From Bugula neritina (lineage: Eukaryota; Animalia; Bryozoa): 64,000 bases of DNA. Location: the NCBI GenBank assembly GCA_964035545.1, contig OZ037765.1:29821504-29885503 (forward strand). Direction: 5' to 3'. Both the position numbers and the translations under genes were made by a program. Numbering within the stretch: the first letter of the stretch is position 1; every line of letters begins with the position of its first letter. This document shows, one piece after another, positions 21,260 through 55,302 of this stretch. The notes below the pieces were generated by a model, which worked only from the letters and a program-made list of their open reading frames with translations, was not told where the DNA came from and did not search any database.

Positions 21260-21919
21260 TATTCCTACCTCCTACAGGAAAGAGTAGAGTGTATATATTA
21301 TCAGCCAGAGTTAACACTGATGACTATATGTATATAACCCTGACTATTCCTTTATACCGACTACCATTACTCCATTCTCTTAATGTTATTAAATTGATCA
21401 GAACTGTACGATACTACATAACTGTGTATATATTTGAAACTATCTGAAAATAAATCATTTTAATTTCAACAAAAAACAAATACTATATTTGCTGTCATAG
21501 GACACCAAAGGGCATCTTGCTGACCAGCCGAGAAGCGATGTTCTGCGGTCACAAGACACGTCTTTACTCTCCATTATACACATTTATCGTTTTAACAATT
21601 CACTTCATGGAAACAGGTACTGCAGTGTCAATAAGATTTTTAGAAATATTATTATATTGATGTTTTTGTTTGGGCAGATATATCTGTAGGTATGCGACGT
21701 CATTGGCTTGTCTGTGATTTTCGCTCACCTGATTGGATAGAGCAGGCCGTGATGTGGAGATTACTCCTAAACTGACAAAGGTATTACAAGTTATTACATG
21801 TACATTAGTTTGTGATAGCTCTGCATAATAAATAGAGGCTCTTTATTTATTGTTATGTATTTTATTCTAATATTTCATCAAGTGGAGCACGTTTAGGTTA
21901 GGAATTGTCTTGTTATTAG

Positions 21920-23165
21920 TTAGTCTTCATTTCTGAAATCCTTGGAGATGTCGCTGGCGCAGTGAGCAGAATTGGGGTCCAAATAGTGATAATATCTGCC
22001 GGTTTTCATTATTGCCAGTTTATTACAGTTTGTGTGACAGTTCTCTGTGTGTCTCCAGTCCCAGTCTTTCTTGCCAAAGTTTACTTCACGTTGATATTCA
22101 GAAGCAGCAGAACTTTGAAAGCAATCATAAGTTTTCATCTCCCGGTCTGTTGGGTTATATTTTCCAAATTTGTCTGCACTTGGCTTTTCATCTTTTGTAC
22201 AGTTGAAACTATCCGTCTCCTGTAGATTTCTAGAGTGTTCTACCGCCCTTTTCTGGTAAGCTGCTGTTTGCTGCCTAGTGTCTGCTGTCATGTAGTTGCT
22301 GCCAGCTATCAATCTGTGTTGATCTCCTATACATGGTACTGGTAAGTCTCTATGGAGGGGATTCTGTATTGATCTCAGAGAGACAGTCTGCGTGTCTGGC
22401 ATCACATACCTGCTGTATCTTTGTCGTAACTGTATTCTGTCCAAATCCCATAATCCTCTGTATCCTGCACCCAGTGGCTCAAATGGTGCCGCTTTTTTGT
22501 ATATAGGAGGTGTGAGGTACGAAGTTATGGTTGGTGCTTTGTGCTGTATATAAAATGTAAAGTGAGATTTTTTATAAATCCAATACTAATCGCTAGTTTT
22601 TTTTATTTACTCAAGTGTTTGCCAACTTGTTTCTTTATTTGAGTTATTTAAGATGCAATTCACCTTTTTAAAACTCTTTCATGCATTACGATAAACCACC
22701 ATTTTTCAGATGTCTCTAAGGTATCATTCAATTAACTTGGTCAAACAACTGTTTTATCAGCTCTCCAAAAAGCTCGGCGTGGCATGCATTTAATTTTGAG
22801 CCACCCTTTTTGCACTATGTACTGAGGAGTTGTGCGTCTTCTAGCTTTTCTTATTCAGGCATTAGAAGCCATCAAATTGGCAATGCCATAACTATAACTA
22901 TGACTAGTGTACCTATAACTAGTATAACTATATGACAAAAATATTAAATATGTAGTAAATTTGCTTTTATAATAAACAGTTACCCAAAACCCCTAACTGG
23001 TAGAAAGGTGTGTTAAGTAGTGCTCACTTCATTCCAAGTATGTCTCAAATGAGCAACCCCTTGTTCCAGATCAGACTGGCCCAAGGATTTCTGGTAATAG
23101 GGGTGGGTCCAGTTGGAGGAGTTGTACCACCCACTAGACTCCTGGTGTATCATGGAATTCTTCAT
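21920..23165 (-). CDS. Uncharacterised 253-aa hydrophilic protein, 2 coding exons
   Basis: Exon 23165-23028 (MKNSMIHQESSGWYNSSNWTHPYYQ...HTWNE, donor GTGAGC) joins in phase 0 to exon 22543-21920 (acceptor TATACAG; HKAPTITSYLTPP...DFRNED*). No recognisable domain. Confidence 0.7.
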
Positions 23166-27264: not shown

Positions 27265-30200
27265 TTAGTTCCATAATTTGCTTTGTCGCTGCTTATTTAA
27301 AAGTTCAGATAACTTAGTATTAGCATCCTGAGTGAATGGTAAAGGGTTTGGGTGCTCAGCCCACACTCCGTCCAAATTTTGAGTTCTAGCAGCTGAGGCT
27401 AAGCTTTCCTTTTTCCCATTTTTCAAGTTGCTGAACTCAGCTATAGGAGAAGAGGTAGGACTGTACAAAGCTGAATGAGATAAAGTTCTACTCTGCAATA
27501 GTTAAATCACTAAATACATTACAGTTTGTCACAAGCTGTCTATTGTATAAATGTAAATTAGCTATAAAAGAGTAGTGATATTGGTTCACCAAAATTCTTT
27601 GCCATTTAGTATTGGCAGGTAGGATGGCAATTCAACATTCAACTTTTGTAGAAATTATAAAGATGTTGGACATCCTGTTTAAAACCCAAAAAGTGTACCC
27701 CAGGTTTTAGAAAGTACCACAGCCATGGCTAATAGAACTAATTTTAAAATCAACGATTCCCTACATGGCACATGCACACTTGCCATATAAATATTTATGC
27801 GCAATACCAGTTCAAGATTGCAATTGCACAATACCTTGTATTTTCTTTGTAATGATAAAGGTAAAGTTTCACTTTTCCTCATTCCAAAAGTTTGAAGGGA
27901 GAGATTAGAAATTTCTTTCTCTTGTTCCTGCAAAGCATTGCTATATTTTATGACTTAATTAATAACAGAAGACATAAGTAATTAAATTTAATAAACTTTT
28001 TTCTTAACAAATATGTATACTATAAATAATATAACTGCTCATGTTGCTAACCAGTTCACAATTTTACCCAAAATAAACAACAGGCTTCAAATAATGATCT
28101 AGCAGCAGTATACATCTATAGAGGAATATATTTATATACTTGTAATATTTTTGTGGATGCATCAACTCTTTCTTGCAAATATTCACAGAGGTCTAGAGCA
28201 GCATCCGCAATGATCTCTGCTGGAATCTTGCCAACTTTTTGAGCATGTCGAAGAGATTTTGCTGAACATAGTTTCATATCAATCATGGATAAACATCTTG
28301 TCATCAGGTCTTTATCTTGAATACACTCTGTTTCAGATAAAACAAATGTTAAATGCCCAATCACATGATATAGTAAGAACACACACCTAATGGTGACAGA
28401 CATTATTTTATAAAACATAATACGCACAGACTATTGTGCTATAGGTTACAAGCTATAGATATTCAGTCAGTTTGAAACAGCTTTGTTACTACAGACTGAT
28501 AGTATATATATGATATTGGTATATATGGAGTGGATAAGATGCTGGTTCCAATGAAACAGTCGATATCCACCATCACTTTCACAAAAATAAATAAGTTTTA
28601 TTCATCGAAATAAAACTGTTCTAATACATAAATATTTTTTAAAATTGATGGAAAGGAGAGGTTGTCTAAGCTGGAGCCAATGATTTGGGATTTCTTTATC
28701 AATTAATATGTTGGTGCTATATGATCTGTGATACTGGCATTTTCCCACCAGTTCAGCAAATACTCATGCTATTACTGGGCAAGAGAGAAAGATTCTCTTT
28801 AGAATGTGAAGAGTCTAATCGTGGTATATTTTGTACACAGCACTTATGCAACAAAAGAAGCCAGATTTACTAGGAAATATTTGATATTCAAGTGGTATAC
28901 AATGCACTCAGGTTATAATTAGCTGGTATATAATATTGTTATGTCAGAATGAGTTAATAATATACACAAACCGATACTACTTGCAAATACCATGTGAGAA
29001 CTCTGCATGTGGAAGTAAACTTGGGTGGAGAGTAAATGTCATAAACAGAAATTAGAAACCTAAGTACAACAAAACCAGCTTCTAGTCGTATGATTTATCG
29101 AAGGGAGTAAAGGTGACACTGTCTAGACTCTAGACCATATTATACTGCTATAGATGTGAATACATTCATAATATATTATAGGCTTTCATTTGTTCTGATT
29201 TATTCATTATCAAAAATTCATTTGTGCCATAATTTATATATACTCTCTTAATAAGTGTAGACTGCTGCCTTTGAAGCAACACAGAAGTAGGAACATAATA
29301 GTACAATAAGATCAAGACATTCTGGTTTTATAAGAAGTTCTTGATTTGGATAATCTGACTTTAGCTCAAATGCAAGAAACTTCCCACAGCATTTGAAAGG
29401 ACAAATTTTTAGCACCTGCGTGCCTTACATATTCAGGAATGATTGAAGCTAATCTGTTATCAATTAGATGCTGGTTACATAATCCAAGTTTAAAATGGCA
29501 TCTATTACATAACAAATATGTGAACATCTGCCCATGTCTTGCTATTTGAAAGCTAATTTTGTTAGTTTGTACAATAAACTAATTTTATCATTACAAACGT
29601 ATTATAGCATTTCAGTGAAGCATTCAATGCTCTTGAAAATATTTAATGCTTGCAAGTTTCATTCGGCTTCTAATTAATATAATTTTACTGGAATCCTCAT
29701 CCTAACACCAGAAGTCGTAGATATTGATTAAGCTCAGTGTCTTGACAAATAATCTAATTTTCTTATAAAAGATGCCAACTCTATGCATGTTTAGAGGAAA
29801 TAGTGCCAATATAGGAGTGTCATGAACCTGCCACTCAAATCAATTGTTCCTTAATTCATCATTAGATACTGCACTATCGTACATTGGAGGATGCATTGCT
29901 ACACTGCAGTATACAAAAGCCAAGGCCTTTTACATACTTGCAGATAGATTTTGCTTTGCTGAAGTAAAATTACAAAGCTTTGCTTTATAAGGTATAGCAA
30001 TTGTAACTCAATTCTAATATCTCTTTTAGCAGGTTATTTGACTTAAAATTTGACTGGTATTGCAGGAGGCGATATAAATAAACAATAATTTAGGTATCCT
30101 ACAAAAAGTTTTGGGCACCTTCAATCAAATTTAAATTATAATTGCTATAATAAGTTTTTGAAGCTATAGTACAATGTTGGTAAATATAAGCCTAAAAAAT

Positions 30201-32486
30201 AGTAGATTAAAGAAACTTGATACTCTAATACTGATAAATTACCTTGTTCCTACTTTGCTTTTAAATTAGACTTTTAAGGCATAAAAAAGCTTTTTTATAT
30301 CAATAGTTACCCACAATCACTACTTAATTTTGAAAATAAAACTGAATACCTCATTATGCTTTTTAAGACCATCTTTTCAAGCTTTAAAGCTATTCTGGAG
30401 AATGTTAGACCACTAATATCCTATATTATCATTATCATGCATTATTTGGTAAGTCACTACTTTACAGATATGTATTTACAGTACGTATTGTTCAAAAGCC
30501 TGGCCAAAGCTGATGTACAAATTAAACATCTCATACTGGAAATACACGATTGCTATTTAGCAAACGCATCACTGGATGCTAAGACCAGCTGAGCTTTAAG
30601 CAGATGCAGGTGTAAACCGTGGAAGTTTTAAATGCTAAAGTTATATACCAAAGGTTATATAACCTGTTTCCTTGATGAGCACTGCATGTAACACTTATTA
30701 TTCATTGATCTGTGGGACAGAAAAGATAAATAGTTTAATCAAAGCCTTTTTAAGATGTAAATGACATTTTTTAAGAATTTTGCTAAAAAAATATCCTAAC
30801 AAATGCTGTTGTAGTAAAAAAAAACTTTTTCTGTTGAGTAAATCAAATAAGTTTCAAGTTTTTCAACAAAAAAGGATGTGAAACCTGTAAACCTATAACT
30901 TAGGAACATGGAGTCCCCATATCAACAGACCAAAAACTAAAACTGTAATTTTTTTCAAGTTTATCCCCTTTTTTACTTAGCAAGTTTTGAGTGGCATGTT
31001 TATCAATGTTTTGTTAATAAATTTTGGAGCAGTTGGAATTCTTGTGAAAACATAACTTCTTTTGCTATCTGTTTAATTTAAAACTTATGGGCTTTTTCAA
31101 TTTCTCCATTCCGGCACCTAATTGTAATCAAAGCAAAGGACACCCTTTCTTTATTTTAGAATGACTTATTTCAAGCTATGACCAACTCACTGCAGAAACA
31201 CCCAGCGGTAACTGTAGGCAGATTCTGACTATATATTGCTTACCTCTACTATTTAGTACTGAGGCGATGTGAAGCAAGTTATCGTGACAGGATATTGTTT
31301 GTAATTTTAAATTTTCCATCATCTTGAGAAAAGTTTCAAGGGTTAATGCATCATCAGCAGCCATTTTCATGAGATGCTCAAGAAAAAGCTCCTTTACTTC
31401 CAAACTTAAACTATCTGCTTCTACTTTTTCCACAAATGAGATTAAGATTTGTTCCCCTAATAAGGAAATGCATTCAGCATCCATTTGGTTTGCCATTATC
31501 GCTGCAATGTTTCCTAAAATTTCCGAACTGTTATCTGATTTCGAGTATGCTTGAAGGAGCGGCTTTAACCACTCAACAGACGTGTGCTTAGCCAGCATCG
31601 AGTTGGGCTTTAAAATACTCAACAGTGTCTGTATCTTTTCAAGATTTTGTTCATCAAGAGGGCTATGACCATTGCAAGTTGTCAAATCCAAACCATTTCC
31701 TGTTTCCACATCTTTGCTGACTTTCCTATCTTGACTGTCATCACTATCTTGACTGTCATCGCTGCCTTCACAGCTATTACTTCTTTCAAGGTTACTGTAT
31801 CCGTTGCCAACAGCAGTATTGTCACCTGTGTTTTGTGTATTTTCTATCAAGAATTTAATGTAACTAGAGATGAGAATGTTTACAACTTCAAGATTTTTAG
31901 CTTGTTCTTGACATTTCTGCATAATGCCGATAAAGAAATCAAAGTCCATAGCAAAAAACACTGCCTGAATACTGTGACTTGTAACCTGTTCTATGGTTGA
32001 GGTTCCATACTGACTTTTGTTCCAATGCTGTATTAGGGATGAAAGGCATTGTTCCTGAGTATGCTTTGATGTTTCATTAGTATTGTACTTTGAAGTCGAA
32101 GACAGGAGAATAAGCATTTTATCTAACTCTTTCCCTCGCTTACCATTTTTCAGCACTTCCTCTATAAATATCCCTGTCTTTTCATACAAGTTTCCGGAGC
32201 CCCACATCTCCAGGTATTTGGCACCACATCGAATTCCCACTACATTTTCTACTGTTATTTCAATGGAAATGTTGTAACAGAAGTCAGCAATTATTGTGAA
32301 CACCTCGATTCCTCCAGGAAAGTTCTCCAAGTTTATTGCATGTCGAGATCCAAGTTTGGCAAACTCCTTCAGAAATAATCCGGATTTTGTGTAGAGTGGG
32401 AACCTGTGCAGCTGAAACTGATTTTCCTCTATGATTACGATGATATCCGACAGCTCCCCTCCTACTCTAAACTTCCTGAAATCCAT
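27265..32486 (-). CDS. BTB-NPH3-coiled-coil protein of NPH3/RPT2-like (NRL) type, 4 exons, 583 aa
   Basis: Exons 32486-31244, 28327-28140, 27927-27835, 27492-27265; GT-AG and phase-consistent. N-terminal BTB with NRL-style motifs SDIIV..FQLHRFPL..KSG, FPGGIEVF..ADFCY, RCGAKYLEM..GNL; C-terminal NPH3-domain-like FLKMMENL..SCHDNLLH, CLSMIDMKLCSAKSLRHAQKVGKIP. Confidence 0.85.
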
Positions 32487-33462
32487 GATGCACCCTTAAT
32501 GGTGCTCTTCTAGTTGTAAAATCTTGTAAATGCTGCAATCCAAAGCTATAGTATGTTTACATAAAGCAAGTGAGGCACATTGTTATCTATAGTTGTTAAA
32601 CTTGCTGTGCTGTGGTCCTAGTTGCTGGTTGTCAGGTTAATAACACCTCAATGCAGTGTTGTTTACTAGTGGATCAAACTGCGTAGCGCATTTATCAGGT
32701 TACTTAATGTAATGTATAAAAGATCTCAATTCTTATCGCCTTCACTGACTCTGCATGCAGTATAGCAATAAATTTGTATGGCTTGTAATAAGCATTTAAA
32801 TGCTAGCTAAGATAAACATCAACCAATACTATTATAATGCCTCACCCTGCTGCTCAGTATTTACACTAAAACTAGGACAATAATTGTGTTCTGCTGATTA
32901 TACGCAATGCTTTGTCAATACAGTGTTATGTTATGTCTCAGGCAGTTGATATGTAAGCTCGCTCGATAAAGTTCATTAGTGGATGAGTACAGGTTAAAGG
33001 AAATGTCAACAATGGCTGTTTCAATCCATTGTACGAAATAATTCTCGTTACCTTAGCCTATTTGTGAAAGTATTCTATAATTTGTGAAATTATTTGAATA
33101 TAGTAGAGATAAACGGTTCTTGCTGTTTGTGGCTTCTTATCAACTAATATCACTTGCAGCAAAGGGTTAAATATCATCTATTGTGGCATTTGCAAAATTT
33201 CGTAGAATTTTCCTAGCTTAAGTGTGTCCCCGGTACAATAATTATTATTAAAGCATAACTTAGATAAACTACAACTACAGGACTTCCTAAAGTATAATTT
33301 ATATATTATCATATTTATATAAATTAAAGTGATGTTTTATATTTAAATTTTGTTTAAAACAAATCTGAACGATATGCATCAAGATTTTACTGAATGTTGT
33401 ACTGGTAGTACTATAGTTCAAAGTAACAAGTGCCTGTAAGCTAATCAAATCAAAACTGTAAT

Positions 33463-36486: not shown

Positions 36487-39400
36487 ATGGGAAAAAGCAG
36501 AATCAACATTATCATGTCAAGAAGTAAATTAAAGAGGTTTACAGTTGCAGTAGTACTTTTAGCTACTCTTAGCAATAATATATTAGCACGAGAGCCTCCA
36601 GCTGATAACGTCTTAACAGACTTCATGAAATTCAATGGAATACCAACAAAGATTCCGCTTGGGTTATTATCAGAATCTCAAGATATTGAGGACATAGAAC
36701 TTGTGAATGGGACATGTTTTAAATACGGGTTACACTCTTTCAACAGATGTAAGTACTATTCGGACTGCTGTCTTATGACTTCTGCTAAACCCCTGGAGCA
36801 GCTGGCTTACAACACATTTTCATGTCATGATAACTTCTACATTGTGGATAAATGTCCCCAGAAAACTCCGAATAAGGAACTGAAGGCTTTATGTGAAGAG
36901 TTCAGCTCTACAGAGTCTGGTAAGTATCGAGAATGAAGTTGAGCTTTCAATAACTTAGTATTGATTCCAAAAATACAGTAAAGCTCTATGGCTCTTATAA
37001 ACTTAAATTTTAAAACTTGGGTTTGATATCATGAGGTTTTGCTAGTTAGTACTGCAGCGTAATAGTAATATGCAATGAATGCTATTCTTTGACATGAGCT
37101 ACTTGTTTACTTATATTGCAGCAGCATAAACTTATGATGCAAAAGAAAGAAACTAGTTCACTAGCACTGCGTTTCCATGACTGCGCATAATGCGAATGAA
37201 TGCTTCGTACGGATTATTTGTGGTTTGTGGTTTGCATTACCTTATAGTTGCGGTTTCATCCGATGTAACTGTTTCCATTAGCCGGATGAAAAAATCCATT
37301 CGCATAATGCGATAATGGAAACGCAGTGTAGATGCAAGTATAGCAGAAATAGCACAATACGTTATACTCATCATATTTACCCTTCTACTAGCTACACAGT
37401 TGTATATCATTTGCAGATCTATCGCTGAAACGTTGGCCAGTACGAGGTCTGGTGAATCATCTCACCTATAAAAATGTTTTCTGCGCCATGTGCAATGGTA
37501 TTGATCCTCAGGCCCGTGTGCGTTTTGCTGATCAGTTATGGTTTGGTGATCCAAATAAGATAAATGATAGTGTGAGTACCATGGAATGGTGGCCAGCAAA
37601 GGTAGAGTGTAGCTCTGTGGCTATTGACAAATATCTCTCTTCAGATACTGACCACAAAAGTCTAATAACTCTAGTAAAAGAGTGAGTATTTAAGAAATAT
37701 TTTCTACTTCCTTTTCTCTCTCTCCTCTCCCTCTCTTTGTCTCTGTCTGTTTCTCTCTCTTGTGGTTTGAGTAGCAGGTTGTAACTGTAACAAAAGTATA
37801 ATTTTTTTCAAAAACAGCATACTCGGGTATTTTGACATTTATACTCTGATTCAGCACATGGTCATCTCCTTTAGCAGCAATAACATGATTATGATAATTA
37901 ATGGTTATGGCTTGAATTTGACAGAAGGTTGGTTTCTTTTCCTAAGCTATGGCTTGATTTCTTTGACCAGAATGTAGCATAACATGTTGGGGGTTCACCC
38001 TAACTCTATGTAGCGTTAAGTTTACCCAGTAATCCCCGTGGTGTAATGGTTAGCATACTTGCTTGCAAGCTGGAGATCTCAAGTTCGATTCCCAGTGAAG
38101 GCAATTATTTTTCACTTTATATATAAAAATGCTGCATCACAAAAATAGATGGTGGTGATGCATGCATCTCCTCTGATGGGTGTGAAAATCAATATGCCAA
38201 CATTCAGCTTCTGAAAAATTATATATTCTATTTTCCTGCACAGATGTGATTGCCAGTGCTAAATAGCTTCTACATAATAAAATAATTTTTAAAATAGCTT
38301 TACTTAAGCTAAATTTAGAAGCAGTATTATATACCTGTAGTTTTTGCACACTACCATTAAAAGAGCTAAGAGACATTGCCTGCAGTTTGAGTTTTTTAAA
38401 GTATAAACATCTTTCACAAGGCAGTTAGCACTTTTTATAGTTTTTTTCAGTCTTGGCCAGTGTTGTACAATACATACCATTTTTAAGAATTTTAGAATTT
38501 ACATTTCGATAAAAAAGTCTTTATATTACAGGGTTTATCTTGAAAGTTAGATTATTAGAACTTATTAATGTACAATCAATATAAATGATGCAGCTAGTGA
38601 CAATTTTTGAGTTTTATAAATGTAATGGCTATTGTATTATATGATATGCATCATGGTCTTTGTTCTGCAGATCCTGCAAGACGTTATACTTGCCCCCAGA
38701 ATCTCCAGATCTGTGTTGGGATGCTGTTAGGAAATGTCCTACAAATTCTAATAGCGAGTTAAAGACCCTTTGTGAGAAAGGACCTGTCAACTATATTAAC
38801 ATCACAAACTTAGATTTGGTATATCGCAACCAGTTCTGTGCCTTGTGTCATGGTGTGGATCTTTTACTGGATAAAGTTGCTATACCTCAGCTGCCCAATA
38901 TGACTGCTTTAATGTTGGAACTTTTTTGGGACAAGAAAAGCAATAAACTTAAAATAAAACAAGATCTGTTTTCACAAGAGAGCGATAAGACATTGATGTT
39001 TGCAAGACCAACTATGTTCAACTTGACAGAGTTATCTAACAGTTTTACGGACTTTAAAATTGATGGAGATTTTGAGTGTTCTTTTTTCGCAGATCAAACG
39101 GCAAGTTATTGTAATGATCGCATAGCACAGCTAAATAGTTCTTCTGGAACTAATATCACCACTGTGCCAGTGTGGAACTTGGGATCCATGGCTTGCTTTA
39201 GCAACGTGAGGAAGATATGTGACCGGTTTCTCATTCCACAAGTTGTGAGTGATGAGATATGCACAAAATCAGGGTGTGGATTTGGACATGTCCTTGACCC
39301 CGACACTTTGCAGTGTTATAATCTGAACACTTTTGGTTCAGTCAGCAACATAGTCATAGAAAACAGTGACTTGCAGTGGCACTCACACTCAGTTTGTGCT

Positions 39401-40793
39401 TACCAGAGTCGATGCAAAGCTGTGGAGTTGGGAATAAAGAAAGAGCACGAGTTGAATTGTTACTGTGATGAATACTGTAGGTATTTTAATGATTGCTGTG
39501 AAGATTCACCGCACCAATCTACCAAACAGACAGTCCTAGAAGTTGGGACATTTTCCTGTGTGTATGACAGATCTGAGTTGAAAAGTGGAGGAGATACTGA
39601 GGGCCGTTCATGGGGGATAATGCAAGTGGAAGCGTGTCCAAAATCGTATAACAACAGTGAAATGAAAGATCTATGTGAGAACCGTCCCAAAAACAAAAAG
39701 TTAAGTTACCAAAACATCCCAGTCACCTCTCTGGATACTGGATTAAGGTAATTTGGTTTTTTATTATAAAAAGATATTGTAAAATGAAAGTTTATTAATA
39801 AAAATTAATAAATTCAATCAGCACATTTTAATAGACTAAAAGTTTTGGGCTGGTTATCGATTGAACACAATACTCAGAGAACTAGGTTTTCCCACATATG
39901 CTGATTAATGCAATAGAACAAAGAAAAATAAGGATAAGAGAATGAATAAAAACAGTATAAAGCGAAATATTACATTTAAATGAAGGTATAACAGTAAACT
40001 ATAGTGCTATGAGAGCTGCATTATGAGGCTATGAAAGAGAATAATGGTTAAGGCAAATTCAATTTACCAGTGAAGGATTTTTTGGCAAAAACACACTGCA
40101 TATTTACCATCTATCAAAATCAGTGTATTATAGTTAGCTACAAGATATTTTTATGCAATATTTTATGTATTTTTTAAGTTTATTGGTTAAATGAGTCATC
40201 TTTTAAATGAGTCATCTTATCTAATATTTGACTTAAAAATCAGCTTATTTGAAGGAAATAAACCAACCTGAGCCATGACTCACTTGTAGTTAATTCTACA
40301 TAATTTTATCAAAAGCCATTATTTTGAAAGGTATTTATAATATTTACAGGTACGCCAACCTATACTGTGCCATATGCAACAACGTCAAAGATATTCGTTA
40401 TTGGAGGGTAGATGTGGGTTGCCTTCATGTGGCTAATGATAAGTGCAATTATGTTCCGAAATCACTCAGCCGAGAAAAACTTTTTCTTCCTAATGTATTC
40501 CGGAAGAATCCAACCGTAACTGAACTGAAACACAGCAAGTGAGTTATTTTTAGAGTAAATTAATAATTTATTTTATTCATGCTGTCACTTCACAGCATGT
40601 AGTAGCAAAGTTAAGGTGTCTCTGGTGTCTATCAGGAACTGTGATTCTCCTACAACTAGCTTTGATTAACTTCATAGTCTGCAATAGTTGTTCTGACTGA
40701 TAAACCTAATAAGAAATCTTCTGAGTATTATTAGATTTTCTTCTTTATAATTATTACTAATTATTGAGTTGAAAAGGCATGAACATATATTTG

Positions 40794-40881
<88 letters not shown>

Positions 40882-43139
40882 TGTGTGTGTGTGTATTCAG
40901 CTTATAATGCAAATATACCTTTATTAGGAACATATAACTTGTTATAATTATAGCCCAATCAGCCACTTTAACTGCATTGTTGATGCTAGCAAATGCACTT
41001 GTTAAAAATAGTTGTAAATAACATGCTCTGTTCTTTTTCCTCTATGATTGCAGATGCCAGATAAAGCAATACTCACCTCCATTAGAGTTGATAGATTCAG
41101 TTCGAAGGTGCAAATTTGATGCAGCAAACTATGTAGCTTCATGTCCCAAACACGCTGAACATTGGAAAATAGCAGACATGTGTTCGAATGGCCCCACTTC
41201 CTTTGTCTATGATAGCGGAGAATTGGAGAATCTAGTAGAGAAAATTTATTCTTTTCCAATCAACGACATTGACACTAGTTACGGGATAAATATTTTGAAG
41301 CATTTTCAAAAGAATAAATATAGGAACAGCTACTGTGCCAGTTGTAATGGTGTGGTCTGGCTTGGGTGTGATGCAAAACCAGATAATGTTATTACTGGAA
41401 CATCAGAATATGCAGTTGATCGATGGTTAAGGTATGAGAAGGACGTGATGAAGTTTTTATTCAATTATGAAATAGATTTGAACGAGAGAACATGTAACAT
41501 GAATTCAGATGCTGTGCTGCTATACAGTGACTTCAACACAACTCTAGACACTTGTTCAAACATAAGTGACCACCTTAAGCAGTGTGATTGTGACAGCATA
41601 CTAGACTTGGATTCAGAAACGTGTATTCCAACACCATTTGTGAATAGCAAGTGCAGAGAGAACAGATATGAACCAGAAACATTCAAAGTTGCAAATTATG
41701 GAATCAAACACTGTGGAAAAGGCATGAAATGTTTACCTTTGTCTATTCCTAGTGCAGTTGGTAAATGTTTTTGGTGTTTATACTTGAATGCAACAGGAGA
41801 TGATCGTCGGCTATCGTATGAGCAGTTCACTGGTAGCCCTTCTAAATATACAAACACTGTAAACAGCGCGGTGCATTGTCCTGCAGCTTATTTAATTAAA
41901 TGCAGTGTATCTGATATAAAAGATTCCTATTGTGCAGAAAACTTTTTTACTTCTGCAATAGGTTCTAGTGCGTTTAGTAAGAAGATAACTCCAAAGACTT
42001 CTCTTCTTAATTCTTTAGCAATTTCGTACAAACCAACTAAATTTAACTTTCAAGCTCACATAGAAAAGTTGGCTTCACTTGGTGTCGAGCTTTTGTTTTC
42101 AACATTTAATGATGACAATTTAAACAGTCAATGCGTGGAATACTCACTAACAAGGAACCATACTAGTTGGCTAATCTGCAAAAATGGTGAGTTACACAGA
42201 ACCTTAGATCAAGCTCATTATGATGACTACCTATTGTGGAATGATGAGATACGAGTCTGCACCAAAACTGCTGTACCGGAATTTATTCTCGCAACTCACG
42301 ACTACGTCTTTTCTTCAATATCCATTCTGGTCATTTTAATCTACATTATTTATTATTTTACTAAATTGAAAAGGACTGTGACAGGAAACTTTGTCGTAAG
42401 TTCTATGATTACACTGATGTGTGGATTAGTGTTTTACTGCCTCATTAACGAGAAGAATTCTTTCCTATCTTGTCAGATAATTGCTTCCTGTACTCAGTAC
42501 TTCCTTATTGCTGTACACACGTGGACAAATGCTATTGGAATTTTAATGGTAAAAGGCATTTCCTCTCTTAAACTTGCCAGTCAATCTAGTTGGAAAAAGT
42601 ATGTTTATTATGCTGCATATGCCTGGCTCACCCCGTTCATATTTGTCATAATTGCTTACTCTGTTGATGCAGTTGAACCCCACAATCTATATCCAGTGTT
42701 TTCTAACCAAATTTGCTTTATTTCACGTGGATGGATAAGACTATTAGTTTTCACTGGGCCCATATATTTATTAGTGGTGGTAAACATTACAGTGTGCATT
42801 ATAGCAAGTGTCATCGTCATAAAATCAGGAAATAAAATAACAGTTGACAAGCAAAGAACTCTCAAGAAAGTGATTACAATTATTAAACTCCAAATAATTT
42901 TTGGAATTCACTGGATTATTCTACTTTTTACGGAAATCAAAGGTCCACATCAGACTGGCCTATGGATTGCTCTCAATGTGTTTATGACATTACAAGGAGT
43001 CATAGCAGTGCTAGCCCAGTTGGTTACTTCTGCAAACATTAGAAGGTGTACGAAATGGTTTAATTCAAAGGTTGGACATTATAACCTAAAGAATTCACGG
43101 ATGGCCTTAAACAAAGCTGTTGAACAGGAGTTTCAGTAA
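36487..43139 (+). CDS. Class B-like (Methuselah/adhesion-type) GPCR with somatomedin-B and Cys-rich ectodomain, 5 exons, 1349 aa
   Basis: Exons 36487-36919, 37417-37681, 38671-39747, 40350-40538, 41054-43139. Signal peptide; SMB-like CKYYSDCC and CYCDEYCRYFNDCC; four CP..LCE..Y[KRA]NxxCAxC modules; seven hydrophobic helices with class-B-like CQIIASCTQYFLIAVHTW, YAAYAWLTP, CF, FTGPIYLLVVVNI, IFGIHWI, FMTLQGVI. Confidence 0.88.
37165..37328. mobile_element. 164-bp MITE, PIF/Harbinger-like, in GPCR intron 1
   Basis: Perfect 14-bp TIR CACTGCGTTTCCAT...ATGGAAACGCAGTG extending imperfectly to about 45 bp; 3-bp flanking direct repeat TAG (37162-37164 and 37329-37331). Confidence 0.8.
38032..38103 (+). 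pseudogene. tRNA-derived sequence (pseudo-tRNA or SINE head) in GPCR intron 2
   Basis: A-box/D-arm TGGTGTAATGGTTAGCAT and B-box-like AGTTCGATTCC at tRNA spacing, followed by a T-run; GCA at the anticodon position but anticodon, T and acceptor stems do not pair. Confidence 0.65.
40796..40894. repeat. Compound microsatellite (TG)n(CGTG)n(TG)n
   Basis: Directly visible; explains the THARTHAR ORF 40757-40966. Confidence 0.97.
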
Positions 43140-48943: not shown

Positions 48944-51900
48944 ATGCGAAAGCATTTGTCTCCCAAGCTCAAAGCTAGTCGTAGAAACCAACATTCTAAC
49001 TCCCGTAGTCAGAATGCCAATCATGATGATCCTACTTCATCTACTAATCTCCCTTATGTGGGCCCTAGTCGTGGTAAGAATTTCATCTTATATTTTCTAT
49101 GTTGAATTTATTTGTTGCATAAGATCTGTTGTTTATTGCATTGAGTATAAATGTTATGGGCCTTGAAAGTGCTGATGTGAATTTCCTCATTTAATAATAT
49201 CTGTTTGCTACATGCAAGCAGTTTGTCCATTACAAAATTATTTGTTGGGATATTATTAATCCAAATAATTATACTAATTATTTTATAATTTACACTTTGA
49301 ATATCCAATCTAAAATCTTTAGTGATAGTTAGCATTTCACTTGATTTTTTTATTGAGAAATAGCATGCTTGTGTTGAAAAGTAACTTTAAATTGGTGAAA
49401 AGCAATCTCATTAGTCCAACTACTATGAAATCATAATGAAAAATTTAAAAATATAGGTGCAAGTGGTGAGCAAGCTGATTATGGAGTTGCCTCCACTCTA
49501 CCATCAGGTAAGATGGTTCAGCTAGCCAGTTAGTGTGGTGCCTACAGTGGGTTTTACCCCACGGCACCAGGATACCTAGCTATACTCCGTGTATCAGTGC
49601 TGTTGGGGTTTAAGCTTTACTTTAGGCAACCTGTTTTTTGCAGATTGCTTTTATTTTTATGTTGTGATGCATTTCAGTTTATTAGTTCAAGAGTTTAAAA
49701 CTGTTCCTAGCTGTCCTCGTTTACAGTAGTTGGTACAGGGAACTGTGCCACTACCCATCAGCATATATGCAACCCTGGGGTGCCTTTATAGCCTTGTGGC
49801 CCTTATAAGACTGTTGTGATGGTGTAGTGGATAAAAGCACATTCTGCACCACTAAACTTACCTCCTCCCAGTGTTAGAAACAAATCTCTATAGCAATGAT
49901 ACTGATACTTGCAGGTCAGCCTCATAGTAGTACCAGCTCTGCTCAGACTCCACTGCCTCACTCTGCTCCTGCGAGACCGAGTGGTTCCGCCTCTCCAACG
50001 GTGCAGGAGAATCCTGTACCTGATTCCTCATGTGATGGCCGCGTCTGTAAGTGTTGCTTACTTTTAGATAACATGTGCCTGTTGTTAGTTCTCCTTACTA
50101 GTTTCTAGTGTTTAATTTTGATGTTATGTCACTAGAATATCTTGTCACCACAGTTCACTGTATTCTAGCTAAGTCAGAAGAGCTTCTGGCAGTCAAATCA
50201 CATTGTCATCATGCAATTAATATAGTTATAATGCTGTCGAAGTGTGACAGCAACCGTACCTGCACCGTCAATCTTTTACAGGTGTACCAAGAGGTACAGT
50301 CTCTCTTACAGATGACCAATTACCTTCTTCATCAAACAGAAGAGTTGGTATGCTGCCTCAATCTCTACCTGAGAGCTATGAAGCTCAAGATAATGGCCAA
50401 TCCCGTGAGTCTAGCTTCTGAAAGTTACTTGAACATCATGAATTGATACAAAGTCGCAGTTGAAGCACTTTTTGGGCTTTTTAAAACAAATATAATTTCA
50501 TGCTGTAATTAACCAATTACCCTTTCAGTGTCGATGGTGGTATAAAATGTATAGCTTATTTTTTGAATGCATTCTGCTATTTCTAAGCATGGAAAGCCAG
50601 TCTATTTTCATGTCAACATTAATAAGGGGTGTGGCTCTATGTTTTTATAAATTGTGATTTTTATTTTTGTTTATGACGGCTTTCACTTCACTCCTAGAAT
50701 ATTGTTTAATGTGTTATTATAGGATTGCTGCCTGGTGCCAGGGGCTCTAGCCCTCCACATGCTACTGGACAGATACCCTCATGTCCAAGCTATTACAGTG
50801 CCACTAATATATTTAGTGAGACAACTGTCCCTCATGTACCAGAAGCGCCACCTGGTGGCTTCGTGTTACCGAAAGCTCCCGAGCGGCTGCCCAGCCCTGC
50901 AAGCAGTCCTGCGCCCAGTGACCAGAGTGCTGTTAGTGGGAATTCCCTCTACTCTATGGTCTATAATGATGCCCAGCCCTCTTCTACAGAGAGCTCTCTC
51001 TTCAGTGCTTCGTCTGCTGATGCCGCTGCATCTCAGACCTCTCTACAATGTGTGCCTCAAACGCTGCCTCTGCCAGGAGACAGAGCTTCAGGTGGTGACA
51101 GCCCTCTGCGCTATGTCCCAGAAGTACCTGGAAGGCTGCCTAGTCCTAGCAGCAGTCACATGCTTTCTCATCCAAACCATTTCACATCTGACAGTGAAAC
51201 TGCTATTCCAACTCCTCAGCAACTGCCCACTGTTGAAGCCGGGAGTTCTCAAGGTTTCACAGCTGATCTACACTCGCGTGCCTCGCCGCGTGTTAGAGGA
51301 TGTTCTGCGTTTGATGCTCCAGCTCCAAAGAGAGCTGTTACTCATGCTGCCACTCCAGCTCCAAAGAGAGCTGCTACTCATGCTGCCATGTCCTCTGCAG
51401 CAGAATCTCCTGCCTCAACCTCTTACATGGCAGATCCTTACTCTCTATCCAATACTTCAGGTATCTCCATTTCTTTCTAGTGGTAAATCACAGAGTGAAT
51501 GCATTTTCTTATTGTCACTGACAGTCTCAATTTTCTATTTCTTTAAATATTGTTTAATGTATTATTATAGGATTGCTGCCTAATGCCAGGGGCTCTAGCC
51601 CTCCACATGCTACTGGACAGATACCCTCATGTCCAAGCTATTACAGTGCCACTAATATATTTAGTGAGTCAACTGACCCTCATGTACCAGAAGCGCCACC
51701 TGGCGGCTTCATCTTACCGAAAGCTCCCGAGCGGCTGCCCAGCCCTGCAAGCAGTCCTGCGCCCAGTGATAGAAACTGTTATACAGCCACTAGTGTCGAT
51801 GGCAACTCGGATGTGCCAAATATTCTGCCCTCCGCTGAAGGCAGCAGCCAAAGTTTCACAGCCGGCAGCAGCAATCAAGACTCACAAGACACGACAATGC

Positions 51901-54900
51901 CTCGTTCGAGCAGCACAGACTCACTTGATGTGCAGAGTGTGTCCGGGGGAGACCACATTACGTCTCATGCGTCACATGTCCCTCACCTTCCTCACACCGT
52001 CATTCATCTAGGAGATCACTTCTCTGTCGCAACTGATAATGTTGCAGGTATTGCATCTCTAGTTACTAATGCGCTGTATTACTTGTATTATATTCTGTGT
52101 GTTCTCAAATGTCATCTTAACAACTTCATGGTTGCTTTTAGTTATTTCACTGCATAATTTAGCTATATATCTTAATGCAAGTTGTGCGCTGTGCTTGGCT
52201 CATAGAATTTAGTTCACATGGTGTGACGGCGTTTAAGTTTCATAGTTTGTATTCCATTGATTTACGTGTTAACAGGTGAGAATGAATTCTCGCACCCTTT
52301 AAATGAAGTAAATGAAAATCTCCTTTTTGATGAAACAGTAACTGGCAACTCTCAAGAAGTTGCTGATGCATTTAACCAGCCAAATCTAGCAAATAATGGT
52401 GACTATACAGCTGTTATTTCATATTCTCAAAGTTCTGTAAAAGTGCCCAGAATTCATGTCTGAAGCAATGCGTTGCCTTAAAGTATTTGTTTTCACACTC
52501 TTTGTGATGAAATTATATTCTTCTTTATATGCCAAGCCTCTAGTCTTTAGCTAAGTATTTATTGCACTTTTCATCTTTACAGAATTTGCTAGCGGCTCAA
52601 CAATTAGTCACAATGTCCCACATTATGACTCCCTGCCTGAATATGAAGCCTTGCGGATTCAGGTACTACCTATCAGACCCAACAACCCGGGTAAGCAGGT
52701 TCAAAATTGTGTAAAATATACCAACCATCTATGATATTGTAATAAACTGAGTATTTATATCGTCTCTGAGATTTTCTGTTTGGTTTGTTAGCATCTAACA
52801 ATGTACTCGCCGAGGGGAATTATCTCACGGAGTCTGTGAACCAACCCGCTGCTCAATCTCCGACAGCCACAGATCACAGCAGTGATGAGGATGATGGGGG
52901 TGGCGGGATGTCCCACCTTCGAGTTGAGCAACTCGTAGCCTCAGGCACCGTCTACCAAGGTCATCCACTCTACGGTGAAAACGACCTGCTGCTCAACTAC
53001 ATTCACCCCAACCCTGATCTGCGGCCAGAGCATTTCCTCGCCAGCGCTCCTCATCACCGCCGAGTCCCTGAGGACCCGGATGAGTTGAACCACCTGATGA
53101 ACAGAGTGACTAACGGTATTCACAGAGACTTTCTCACTCTAAGAAGAGCAGGTGAGCATAACTTCTGATAGTTTTCTGCTAGCTATTTTAGTATTGTATA
53201 TTCTCTCATTGATAATTCTATTGAATACATTTGATAGGAATGTCATTGAATTTAAAATGTAGGCAGGTTGCGGTTTTTATTAAATTACTTTGTAGACAGG
53301 AAATTGAGCTTCCGTAACTTGCGCCAAAAATGCTTCATCCTCGAATCTAGATTTTTCTGCTTTATAATAATAATAGAGTTTTTTCAATTCCAACTTATTT
53401 AGATACTAATTAGTTTCCTGCTACTTTAGTGTAAAGAGATGGCAACGAGCATGCAGTCTGTTGCAGTAGCTATGCTAGTTACCATGCACCAATATATGTA
53501 TCACAGCATGTCGTATCTTACATGTATCATATTCTGCAGCTGTCGAGGCAGAGAGTCCTATCAGCTACTCGCCGCTGCCGGTGTCTCCTGCTCCCGAAGC
53601 CTCACCTCAGCACACTGCAGGTAGGCAGCACCTTTCAGGGACTCAGCTGACAGTCTGGGCAGCTTGAACCAAATGACTCAGTGTTGGTATAGAATTACAG
53701 ATTTACTGTAACTTATTTTCATTTGCTAAAACAGTTCTGCCGTACCATTTAGATACAGATATGGATTCTGATGACTCGGATGTAGTGTTTGTCTCCTACA
53801 ATCCACCACCTACAGAGCCACCGCCTACAGAGCCACCACCTACAGAGCCACCACCTACAGAGCCACCACCTACAGAGCCACCACCTACAGAACCACCACC
53901 TACAGAGTCCCCATTCCCTTCTCTATCAGAGCTCTTTCCTCTTATTTCTCGTTCTTATTTAACATCTCCTACATTTACCCGTATGTTGATTTTATGTTCA
54001 TTACTATTCAATCGTTAGTTGCACAGTTTTAGAATAATTTAATAAGGCGAATAGTTATTAATTTAAATACTTGTTTTGATAGCTAAACCTAAATAGAATA
54101 TATACTGTACTGTTATAATAACTTCTAGAATCTGGGACCACTGAAAGCAGCTCTGATATCGTAACTCCAAGTCCCACTTCTGATCAGACCCAGCGAAGTC
54201 CCGGTTTGTAACAAATTTTCTGATATTTATGCTATCTTATAGGAGTTATACTATCTTACAGGAGTTATACTATCTTACAGGAGTTATACTATCTTACAGG
54301 AGTTATGCTATCTTATAAGAGTTATACTATCTTACAGGTATTGCCGGCCGCCTCAGGTCAACTACTCGTCGTCGTAGAGCTGCGATTATGGCAACACGTA
54401 GACTTCGAGCTCTTTACGAGTCTCAGTCTGACGATGAAACTTCTGACCCAATAACCGTGTCTTCATCGTCCTCCGATGTTGCTGTTGTGTCATCTTCTAC
54501 AACTGCTGACCCCTCTACATCAGACGCTGCCGACCCCTCCACATCATACGCTGCCGACCCTTCCATATCAGACGCTGCCGACCCTTCCACATCAGAAACT
54601 GCCGACACTACTGCTAGCTCCAGTTTGCAGACCAGCCGTCCAGTTACATTTGAAGCTACCACTGCTTCAGAAACTGTCAATTCTGCTACTTATGAAGTTA
54701 CACCCGACTCCGTTTCAGAACCTACCCAATCTGTTTCTGTGGAATTTACTGCGCCTTTGGTACTAGAAGCTGTTGATGCTTCCGCTTTTAGCGCAAGTGA
54801 TTTTCCAACAGCAGCTCTCTACATTCCAGGCGCCACTCTGGGCAACCAACTCATAGCAGTTGAGTTGTATGGTCCCGAGACCATCGTATGTCCGTATCAT

Positions 54901-55302
54901 GTTGCAGATACCGAGAGTTTAGCTTCTGAGAGCACATCAGCTGACGTAACATCTCCCTCTAACTTTCCAAACACCTCTTACTCCGATGGGCCTTCAACCT
55001 CAGATGGGCCCTCAACCTCAGATGGCCCCTCTACTTCCGATGGACCCTCTACCTCCGATGGGAGGAGAGCCACTGGGTTCGGCCGACCACCAGTGTTTGA
55101 TTATGATTCCGATTCCAGTATGGAAGTTGACGAGTTTCCTCCCAGACCTGTGGCTACGAGACGCAGACACTCTTCTAGCTCTGATGTAAATATCTCACGT
55201 CTTCTTGTTCAGCTAGGTGTGAAGTTTGGTTACCAGCGGTGTAGGCACCTCATGCTGGTTGGTGGCTACACTCTTGTAACTAAACTTCAGACTCTAAATT
55301 AG
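48944..55302 (+). CDS. Long intrinsically disordered S/P/T/D-rich coding block, 13 exons (separate gene ending 55302, or 5' part of the RNF38/44-like gene via donor at 55186)
   Basis: Exons 48944-49073, 49457-49507, 49915-50046, 50282-50404, 50723-51460, 51571-52047, 52276-52398, 52583-52690, 52792-53151, 53540-53620, 53735-53980, 54129-54203, 54338-55185 (or to stop at 55302); all introns GT-AG and phase 1; open throughout. Confidence 0.72.
50698..51769 (+). repeat. 224-bp near-identical direct duplication (50698-50921 and 51546-51769) including acceptor and exon start
   Basis: Both copies encode LLP[G/N]ARGSSPPHATGQIPSCPSYYSATNIFSE..PSPASSPAPSD; offset 848 bp. Confidence 0.95.
53803..53907 (+). 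repeat. 15-bp coding repeat x7 (PPPTE)
   Basis: CCACCACCTACAGAG units. Confidence 0.97.
54228..54337 (+). repeat. 19-bp tandem repeat forming most of a 134-nt intron and including its acceptor
   Basis: GAGTTATACTATCTTACAG about 6 times. Confidence 0.95.
54505..55062 (+). repeat. Coding repeats ADPSTSxx x4 (24 bp, 54505-54600) and DGPSTS x4 (18 bp, 54985-55056)
   Basis: Directly visible in ORF 54388-55302. Confidence 0.95.

What the first reader, a model, noticed from the sequence alone, without database searches (positions are those of the whole stretch)
27265..32486. A complete plant-type NPH3/RPT2-like (NRL) gene in an animal genome
Seen: an intact 583-aa four-exon gene with AT-rich GT-AG introns, flanked by animal-type genes, so simple contamination is unlikely. 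Its BTB (SDIIVIIEENQFQLHRFPLYTKSG..LENFPGGIEVFTIIADFCYNISIEITVENVVGIRCGAKYLEM..GNLYEKTGIFIEEVL) follows the NRL consensus as I recall it (SD..V....F.LHKFPL..SG..PGG.EAFEL.AKFCYG..IT..NV..LRCAAEYLEM..GNL..TE.FL..VV), not the KLHL/KCTD/ZBTB types. The later region (FLKMMENL..SCHDNLLHIA..CLSMIDMKLCSAKSLRHAQKVGKIPAEII) tracks the NPH3-domain end (KF..LAE....HDGLYRAI..LC..MDC.KLS..A..HAAQNERLPLRVV) and is followed by a coiled-coil-like stretch. Established: NRLs are usually described as plant-specific membrane-associated BTB proteins acting in phototropin signalling and PIN polarity, with NPH3 a CUL3 adaptor. Inference: animals may have an unstudied NRL branch (ancient retention or old horizontal transfer; the 1243-nt first exon is unusually long for this window) controlling polarity or turnover of membrane proteins. 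The conserved Tyr of DGLYRAI is Leu here. Automated NPH3-like annotations may already exist in some invertebrate proteomes and should be checked.
Basis: partly seen in the sequence, partly recalled or inferred. Interest (0 to 1): 0.9.

Follow-up and report, generated by a model that had tools for sequence, protein, structure and literature searches.

The report
Animal branch of "plant-specific" NPH3 proteins
This moss-animal (Bugula neritina) gene is a real, spliced member of an unstudied family found from sponges to acorn worms, and the family's closest relatives are the BTB-NPH3 proteins that plant papers call plant-specific, so that family is older or more widely shared than stated.

Summary
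Confirmed. The four-exon, 583-codon gene sits on a 35.6-Mb contig of the bryozoan Bugula neritina. All three introns are spliced in contigs of two presumed RNA runs, and exon 1 has dN/dS 0.10. It is not a one-off: named homologs occur in homoscleromorph sponges, an octocoral, a hemichordate, molluscs, an annelid, a nemertean, rotifers, flatworms and bryozoans. Five bilaterian phyla share its first intron. The next relatives are streptophyte NPH3/RPT2-like (NRL) proteins. Homology extends beyond the BTB (profile-profile 99.7%, E 3.5e-27), although Bugula's own copy is diverged and stays below Pfam's NPH3 cut-off. Animals and streptophytes split 100/100; nesting in land-plant NRLs is rejected (p 1e-9). 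The root is unresolved, so ancient retention or transfer in either direction all remain open. Bugula lacks the land-plant Tyr, the LIP consensus and the 14-3-3 tail; the animal family resembles basal algal NRLs. Likely role (inferred): a self-associating cortical scaffold or CUL3-type adaptor acting on membrane proteins, independent of phototropin. Databases already auto-label some invertebrate copies; I found no paper describing them, and no earlier scan note on this family.

The parts
31244..32486 (-). Coding exon 1 (1243 nt, codons 1-414 plus 1 nt): BTB, helical extension, acidic linker, first part of the NPH3 domain
   Evidence: covered by contig X3 from 31244 to 32635, which adds at least 149 nt of 5' UTR
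32151..32486 (-). NRL-type BTB domain (aa 1-112)
   Evidence: Pfam BTB E 1.9e-6; a plant-only BTB HMM gives 93.8 bits against at most 34.8 for other Bugula BTBs; profile-profile to plant NRL BTB 100%, E 1.8e-47
31845..32150 (-). Helical BTB extension (aa 113-214), structurally like the 3-box/BACK region of CUL3 adaptors
   Evidence: Model aa 8-212 matches a streptophyte BTB/NPH3 Atlas model at TM 0.97 (by the row), rmsd 1.1 A; aa 1-214 aligns with A55 BTB-BACK (Z 14.6, 183 aligned, rmsd 3.9) and aa 1-155 with SPOP BTB/3-box (Z 14.8)
31653..31826 (-). Acidic disordered linker (aa 221-278), variable in length across the family
   Evidence: pLDDT under 50; dN/dS about 1.4 on few changes, against 0.02-0.12 elsewhere in exon 1
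31244..31652 (-). NPH3-domain core, first part, ending in the HD-x-L motif
   Evidence: Pfam NPH3 E 1.7e-4; animal against plant profile of this domain 99.4%, E 6.8e-22
28328..31243 (-). Intron 1 (2916 nt, phase 1), at the same position in Watersipora, Mactra, Owenia, Macrostomum and Ptychodera; absent in two sponges and an octocoral
28140..28327 (-). Exon 2 (188 nt): end of the NPH3 domain (ID-x-x-L-x-S and IP motifs, the place of the plant LIP) and start of the coiled-coil helix
   Evidence: family profile E 6e-13 on this exon alone
27928..28139 (-). Intron 2 (212 nt, phase 0); the preceding exon is also 188 nt in Watersipora and Macrostomum
27835..27927 (-). Exon 3 (93 nt): end of the long helix/coiled coil
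   Evidence: helix 452-492 in the model; 10 of 13 a/d positions hydrophobic
27493..27834 (-). Intron 3 (342 nt, phase 0)
27265..27492 (-). Exon 4: disordered tail ending in a basic helix with a terminal Trp that is conserved in Watersipora; no RxSxS motif

Best explanation
SHOWN: this is the single Bugula member of an animal BTB-NPH3 family. It was inherited vertically at least from the bilaterian ancestor and probably from the animal ancestor, and it is homologous to streptophyte NRL proteins along BTB, extension, NPH3 domain and following helix (about 0.97). INFERRED (about 0.4): it works like an NRL, as a non-enzymatic scaffold at the cell cortex. The BTB plus 3-box/BACK-like extension would mediate oligomerisation and, in the ancestral form, CUL3 docking. 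The all-helical NPH3 solenoid would bind a membrane-protein client. The terminal NPH3 helix and coiled coil would self-associate, and the basic/aromatic tail would hold it at membranes or in condensates. The net effect would be to confine or turn over particular membrane proteins. It is not switched by phototropin and 14-3-3, because Bugula shows no LOV-type hit and the tail motif is absent. ORIGIN: unresolved; retention from an early eukaryote with many losses is slightly preferred (about 0.4).
For: Family breadth. Profile search of 1.84 billion representatives returns the animal branch and then streptophytes. Post-BTB profile-profile 99.7%, E 3.5e-27. Mactra passes the Pfam NPH3 cut-off at 58 bits and aligns with Bugula exon 1 over 98% (E 6.5e-31). 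29 of 33 post-BTB segments match NPH3 at E up to 1, and no other family is hit more than twice. Language-model neighbours are all NPH3 clusters (0.95). Shared intron. Purifying selection. BTB-3-box-BACK-like fold. Plant NRL mechanism from bioRxiv 10.1101/2024.06.17.598829 and 10.64898/2026.08.17.745151. An unassigned BTB-NPH3-ARM contig hints at members outside both kingdoms.
Against: Bugula's own post-BTB region scores only 4.4 bits on a plant-only HMM, so its NPH3 assignment is transitive through other animals. The alpha3-beta4 hydrophobic-x-acidic CUL3 motif (KLHL11 F130-S131-E132, PMC3597819) appears as M-x-D in sponges, octocoral, Ptychodera and Haliotis but is absent in Bugula (read from sequence position). 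CUL3 binding is disputed even for plant NPH3. There are no localisation, interaction or tissue data. No named homolog was found in fungi, choanoflagellates, chlorophytes or other protists, and no intron position is shared between the animals and plants sampled.
Confidence: 0.6

Rival explanations
1. Origin by transfer towards plants: the BTB-NPH3 architecture arose in the animal/holozoan line (or a protist close to it) from a BTB-BACK-type gene and moved into stem streptophytes, where it expanded into the NRL family.
For: In the BTB tree rooted on ordinary Bugula BTBs, plants sit inside the animal sequences (94/99, sponges outside). Animal copies keep traits of ordinary animal BTBs (N-terminal R-x-x-G-x-L-S-D helix, M-x-D loop). 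Basal algal NRLs look like the animal ones.
Against: Animal monophyly is not rejected (p-AU 0.23). The tree has only 153 columns and long outgroup branches, and the expanded sponge copies may be attracted to the outgroup.
Confidence: 0.3
2. Origin by old transfer (or retro-transfer) from a stem streptophyte alga into the animal stem, before sponges split.
For: The coding region is intronless in Oscarella, Corticium and Dendronephthya, and BTB plus most of the NPH3 domain is one exon in most bilaterians tested, as expected of an mRNA-derived or transferred gene. The distribution is patchy: only animals and streptophytes among named hits.
Against: No animal sequence nests among streptophytes (100/100 split), and joining bryozoans to land-plant-type NRLs is rejected (p-AU 1.3e-9). 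The donor would have to be an unsampled stem lineage. No viral or prokaryotic carrier was found.
Confidence: 0.25
3. Function rival: a dedicated CUL3 substrate adaptor (E3 ligase subunit) for soluble or membrane clients, with no role in polarity.
For: BTB plus 3-box/BACK-like fold matches CUL3-bound adaptors; M-x-D loop in early-branching members; cullin genes are present in the genome.
Against: Bugula has lost the loop motif. CUL3 was not recovered with plant NPH3 in transgenic plants. The coiled coil and basic/aromatic tail are kept.
Confidence: 0.3
4. Function rival: the NPH3 domain is an atypical GTPase acting with RABs and SNAREs in trafficking, as reported for Arabidopsis NRL5, and the animal protein does the same.
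For: bioRxiv 10.1101/2023.05.10.540297 reports GTPase activity for five NPH3-domain proteins; RABs and VAMPs are shared by animals (general knowledge).
Against: The predicted domain is all-alpha with no P-loop fold and only generic HEAT/TOG-like matches (Z at most 9.2). No catalytic residues are defined that could be checked, and no invariant polar column exists in the domain alignment.
Confidence: 0.15
5. Artefact or convergence: plant contamination, a recent bryozoan-only transfer, or an ordinary animal BTB-BACK protein with a chance resemblance.
For: Bugula's NPH3 Pfam score is below cut-off, and its branch is long. Attaching the whole plant clade next to the bryozoans is not rejected (p-AU 0.35).
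Against: Chromosome-scale contig, spliced transcripts, synteny with Watersipora, an intron shared with four other phyla, and colinear profile match beyond the BTB. NRL-like BTBs separate from ordinary BTBs at 98/94.
Confidence: 0.02

Closest known systems
Land-plant NPH3/RPT2-like (NRL) family (NPH3, RPT2, NCH1, NPY/MAB4/MEL, NPT clade); Pfam PF00651 + PF03000
   Same: Domain order BTB, helical extension, NPH3 domain, coiled coil, disordered tail. Colinear profile match. N-terminal 205 residues superpose at TM 0.97. Conserved D and L of the HD-x-L motif, the D-x-x-L-S motif and the Pro before the LIP.
   Different: No N-terminal extension before the BTB. The Tyr invariant in 46 of 46 core plant sequences is Tyr in 20, Phe in 30 and other in 22 of 72 animals, and Leu in Bugula. 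The LIP consensus is replaced by IP-x-x-x-I-x-x-AAL running straight into the coiled coil. RxSxS-like ends occur in 48% of core plants and 2% of animals. Animal tails are Tyr/aromatic-rich. Intron positions differ. Single copy in Bugula against 33 in Arabidopsis.
Basal streptophyte-algal NRLs (Chara braunii GBG65960.1 and GBG60250.1; a Mesotaenium protein)
   Same: HKFPLYSK-type BTB, HD-x-L, no LIP consensus, helix running directly into a coiled coil, no RxSxS end.
   Different: They group with land plants against all animals (100/100); the two Chara genes share a BTB intron not seen in the animals tested.
Animal CUL3 adaptors with BTB-3-box-BACK (KLHL/KBTBD, SPOP, vaccinia A55)
   Same: Fold of aa 1-214 (Z 12-15); M-x-D loop in early-branching family members.
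   Different: No Kelch or MATH domain. The post-extension domain is NPH3-like, not BACK (local profile test 25% at best; no BACK hit for the domain model). The BTB sequence groups with NRLs.

Membership tests
NRL (BTB-NPH3) | N-terminal BTB of the NRL subtype | tested here: met
   Plant-only HMM 93.8 bits against at most 34.8 for ordinary Bugula BTBs; tree 98/94
NRL (BTB-NPH3) | Conserved helical extension after the BTB | tested here: met
   TM 0.97 over aa 8-212 to a streptophyte model; profile match
NRL (BTB-NPH3) | NPH3 domain homology | tested here: met
   Profile-profile 99.4%, E 6.8e-22; ortholog Mactra passes the Pfam cut-off; link to Bugula by alignment and shared intron
NRL (BTB-NPH3) | Pfam PF03000 score above the curated cut-off for this protein itself | tested here: not met
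   21.8 bits against 27 for exon 1; no hit for the full public allele
NRL (BTB-NPH3) | Coiled coil after the NPH3 domain (present in about two thirds of Arabidopsis NRLs) | tested here: met
   Helix 452-492; 10 of 13 a/d positions hydrophobic; prediction only
Land-plant-type NRL clade | Invariant Tyr of the DGLY motif | tested here: not met
   Leu405 in Bugula; 46 of 46 Tyr in core plants
Land-plant-type NRL clade | LIP self-association motif (LRVVVQVLF) | tested here: not met
   The homologous helix and its Pro are kept, but the consensus is not
Land-plant-type NRL clade | C-terminal phototropin/14-3-3 site (RxSxS) and a phototropin partner | tested here: not met
   Tail lacks the motif; the only PAS_9 hits in the genome look like EAG/ERG channel PAS domains (identification from memory)
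Land-plant-type NRL clade | Phylogenetic placement within the clade | tested here: not met
   p-AU 1.3e-9; 100/100 split
NRL (function) | Plasma-membrane association, polar localisation or condensate cycling | not testable with these tools
   Only a basic helix with terminal Trp (net +3) is seen
NRL (function) | Reported GTPase activity | not testable with these tools
   No P-loop fold in the model; no defined catalytic residues
CUL3 adaptor (BTB-3-box) | 3-box helices after the BTB | tested here: met
   Structural alignment to SPOP BTB/3-box, A55, KEAP1 and KLHL3; predicted model only
CUL3 adaptor (BTB-3-box) | Hydrophobic-x-Glu motif in the alpha3-beta4 loop | tested here: not met
   Absent in Bugula; M-x-D in sponges, octocoral, Ptychodera and Haliotis
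BTB-BACK-Kelch | Full BACK domain followed by Kelch repeats | tested here: not met
   No Pfam BACK or Kelch hit; domain model has no BACK match

The most novel reading that the evidence does not exclude
The NPH3 domain is not a plant invention. The animal proteins preserve the ancestral BTB-NPH3-coiled-coil scaffold, and streptophytes obtained it either from a deep eukaryotic ancestor or by transfer from the animal side. Animals that kept it (sponges, octocorals, spiralians, hemichordates) would use an NRL-like cortical scaffold to polarise or recycle membrane proteins: a polarity module shared by plants and animals but missing from the fly, worm and vertebrate genomes first surveyed.
Probability: 0.3. 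Interest if true: 0.88.

Novelty: new variant of a known kind. Interest (0 to 1): 0.72.

Why it matters
Papers from 2005 to 2026 call the NPH3 domain or the NRL family plant-specific (PMC1257465, PMC4327156, bioRxiv 10.1101/2023.05.10.540297, 10.1101/2024.06.17.598829, 10.64898/2026.08.17.745151), and one argues from this that plants keep a GTPase type absent from metazoans. An animal branch spanning at least nine phyla contradicts that. It also makes a long-open question testable: what the NPH3 domain does biochemically. Distant homologs, single-copy in Bugula and free of the phototropin switch, show which residues are ancestral. They allow GTPase, CUL3 and membrane-binding claims to be tested outside the redundant 33-gene Arabidopsis family, including by RNAi in flatworms. 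The score is held down because automated database names already flag some invertebrate copies, no function is shown, and this Bugula copy is among the most diverged.

Tried and rejected
Contamination or chimera: rejected. Recent transfer from land plants: rejected. Idea that the C-terminal half of the NPH3 domain is a BACK-domain derivative: weak profile score and no structural hit, so not supported. Viral or prokaryotic carriers: none. The third homolog search, aimed at protists, returned mainly Oscarella paralogs. An Atlas search skipping NPH3 clusters was blank. The genome-wide PF03000 scan missed this gene, which shows how easily the family is overlooked. Ten literature searches found no paper on animal NPH3 proteins; Bonchuk et al. 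2023 and Christie et al. 2018 are not held, so prior mention cannot be excluded. Run X13, listed as holding the stretch, showed no exon coverage; this is unexplained and may be record filtering. Full-length analyses used the public database protein P0019.
Full report
OBSERVATION. The gene is as described. On the minus strand, exons 32486-31244, 28327-28140, 27927-27835 and 27492-27265 have GT-AG introns of 2916, 212 and 342 nt and add up to 583 codons. The host is Bugula neritina: the nearest named protein is KAF6031278.1 (P0019, 584 aa, 95% identical in exon 1). The locus lies on a 35.6-Mb contig and is single-copy. Contigs of two presumed RNA runs from a diverged B. neritina lineage join all three introns; one contig spans all four exons. 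Against such an allele, exon 1 has dS 0.20 and dN/dS 0.10, and 0.02 in the BTB. The downstream neighbour is also downstream in Watersipora. The window's spliced model was searched exon by exon by reference only; the joined step was left out, and P0019 served for full-length work.

WHAT IT IS. Exon 1 hits Pfam BTB (E 1.9e-6) and, below cut-off, NPH3 (E 1.7e-4). Homolog searches show a family rather than a one-off. Named members occur in bryozoans; bivalves, gastropods and octopus; the nemertean Tubulanus; the annelid Owenia; monogonont and bdelloid rotifers; free-living and parasitic flatworms; the hemichordate Ptychodera; the octocoral Dendronephthya; and the sponges Corticium and Oscarella, where the gene is tandemly expanded. 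In a profile search of 1.84 billion representatives, 282 proteins reach E 1e-30. Those of the best 150 that were long enough to place fall into the animal branch or the streptophyte NRLs, including Chara and Mesotaenium. Many rows are unnamed. No arthropod, nematode, vertebrate, fungal or named protist member appeared, but only a subset could be named, so absence is not shown. PMC1257465 found BTB-NPH3 only in Arabidopsis among 17 genomes, which may explain the plant-specific label.

HOMOLOGY BEYOND THE BTB. Animal against plant alignments, with the BTB removed, give hhalign 99.7%, E 3.5e-27 over 306 columns; the NPH3 core alone gives 99.4%, E 6.8e-22 (pairwise E-values). Mactra passes the Pfam NPH3 cut-off (58 bits). 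A plant-only BTB HMM scores Bugula 93.8 bits and the best ordinary Bugula BTB 34.8. The plant-only post-BTB HMM scores molluscs 67-107 bits but Bugula only 4.4. Bugula's NPH3 assignment is therefore transitive, through Mactra (25% identity over 98% of exon 1, E 6.5e-31) and the shared intron. Language-model neighbours of P0019 are all NPH3 clusters (score 0.95). The AlphaFold model (mean pLDDT 78) matches a streptophyte BTB/NPH3 model at TM 0.97 and rmsd 1.1 A over aa 8-212.

GENE STRUCTURE AND AGE. Intron 1 (phase 1, 14 codons after the His of the HD-x-L motif) is at the same place in Bugula, Watersipora, Mactra, Owenia, Macrostomum and Ptychodera, so the gene was present in the bilaterian ancestor and the long first exon is ancestral. 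The Oscarella, Corticium and Dendronephthya genes tested have no coding intron. The nearby Arabidopsis lyrata intron is phase 0 and about 4 nt away; no intron position was shared between the animals and plants sampled.

PHYLOGENY. In a full-length tree (36 rows, 451 columns, LG+C20), streptophytes and animals are separated at 100/100, and animal deep branches are unresolved. Joining bryozoans to land-plant-type NRLs is rejected (p-AU 1.3e-9); attaching the whole plant clade beside the long bryozoan branch is not (p 0.35). With seven ordinary Bugula BTBs as outgroup (153 columns), all NRL-like BTBs group at 98/94, and plants fall inside the animal sequences at 94/99. Animal monophyly is not rejected (p 0.23), nor is a root on the bryozoan branch (p 0.17). 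The root is therefore open. My weights: ancient retention with losses 0.4, transfer towards streptophytes 0.3, transfer into the animal stem 0.25. One metagenome contig of unknown source (L056, GC 0.54) encodes BTB, both NPH3 halves (E 4e-4 and 0.025) and LRRK2-type ARM repeats, and groups on the animal side of a quick tree. If it is a protist, it favours an older origin; I could not identify it.

HOW IT DIFFERS FROM LAND-PLANT NRLs. According to bioRxiv 10.1101/2024.06.17.598829, NPH3 uses a LIP helix and a coiled coil to self-associate, an amphipathic helix to bind phospholipids, and a C-terminal phosphoserine, set by phototropin, to bind 14-3-3. In my alignment the DGLY Tyr is invariant in 46 core plant sequences, Tyr or Phe in 50 of 72 animals, and Leu in Bugula. 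The Pro before the LIP is nearly invariant everywhere, but the LIP consensus is not kept in animals. RxSxS-like ends occur in 48% of core plants, 2% of animals and none of four basal algal proteins. Animal tails average 3.7 aromatic residues in the last 25, against 1.2 in core plants. The basal Chara/Mesotaenium clade shares several of the animal states, which suggests that the land-plant signatures are derived. The only PAS_9 hits in the genome look like EAG/ERG channel domains rather than LOV (identification from memory), so phototropin control is unlikely.

MECHANISM (INFERRED). Residues 1-214 fold like BTB plus 3-box/BACK of CUL3 adaptors (A55 Z 14.6, 183 aligned; SPOP Z 14.8). The CUL3-contacting loop motif (KLHL11 F130-x-E132, PMC3597819) appears as M-x-D in sponges, octocoral, Ptychodera and Haliotis but is lost in Bugula. 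The NPH3 core is an all-helical stack (pLDDT 89) with only generic solenoid matches and no P-loop. A long helix with heptad pattern follows, then a disordered tail with a basic, Trp-tipped end. The most economical reading is an oligomeric cortical scaffold that binds and confines or turns over membrane proteins, with CUL3 docking likelier in the ancestor than in Bugula. None of this is shown; I give it about 0.4, a pure E3 adaptor 0.3 and an atypical GTPase 0.15.

NOVELTY AND VERDICT. NCBI and UniRef names such as 'root phototropism protein 2-like' (Gigantopelta) and 'phototropism 2-like' (Octopus) show that the similarity is visible in databases. Ten full-text searches found no paper describing it, recent papers still say plant-specific, and two key reviews were not available. 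The scan's own notes hold nothing on NPH3. Verdict: real, a new animal branch of a known family, a homolog of NRLs but not a member of the land-plant clade; function untested. Interest 0.72.

Noticed in passing
L056:1-1937 (Ga0138258_1417589): Contig of unknown organism (GC 0.54, GC3 0.69) encoding BTB + NPH3-like domain + LRRK2-type ARM repeats, with a frame break near nt 765-900. A new architecture, and possibly a member outside animals and streptophytes.
   Followed up: partly
L038:628-20245 (Oscarella lobularis): BTB-NPH3-like copies alternate with compact rhodopsin-type GPCR (7tm_1) genes in one tandem array; co-duplication, or a hint of a GPCR link.
   Followed up: no
L045 and Corticium/Oscarella hits: Homoscleromorph sponges carry many divergent, clustered paralogs, unlike the single copy in Bugula.
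   Followed up: partly
P0232, P0256, P0255, P0265: A basal streptophyte-algal NRL clade (Chara, Mesotaenium) lacks the land-plant LIP and RxSxS signatures, varies at the DGLY Tyr, and resembles the animal form.
   Followed up: partly
L046:1501-1821 (G000:C4:2122138-2122458): PF03547 hit that looks like GPR155/LYCHOS, the animal protein with a PIN-like transporter domain (identification from memory); a speculative candidate client, with no evidence of a link.
   Followed up: no
window 36487-43139 (+): Large exons encoding a secreted, Cys-rich region with a somatomedin-B hit and a terminal multi-pass region that looks like a 7TM receptor (by eye; no Pfam hit), divergently oriented 4 kb upstream.
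   Followed up: no
window 30880-31085: High-copy repeat fragment in intron 1 (very high summed depth, many loose ends).
   Followed up: no
window 21899-23141 (-): Unannotated downstream gene conserved in sequence and order in Watersipora (L035).
   Followed up: partly
window 50725-52157 and 54388-55302 (+): GC-richer, Pro/Ser-rich ORFs with an internally duplicated segment and short tandem repeats.
   Followed up: no
window 31245-32486 against L002: Synonymous divergence of 0.20 between this genome and public B. neritina sequence suggests cryptic sibling lineages.
   Followed up: partly
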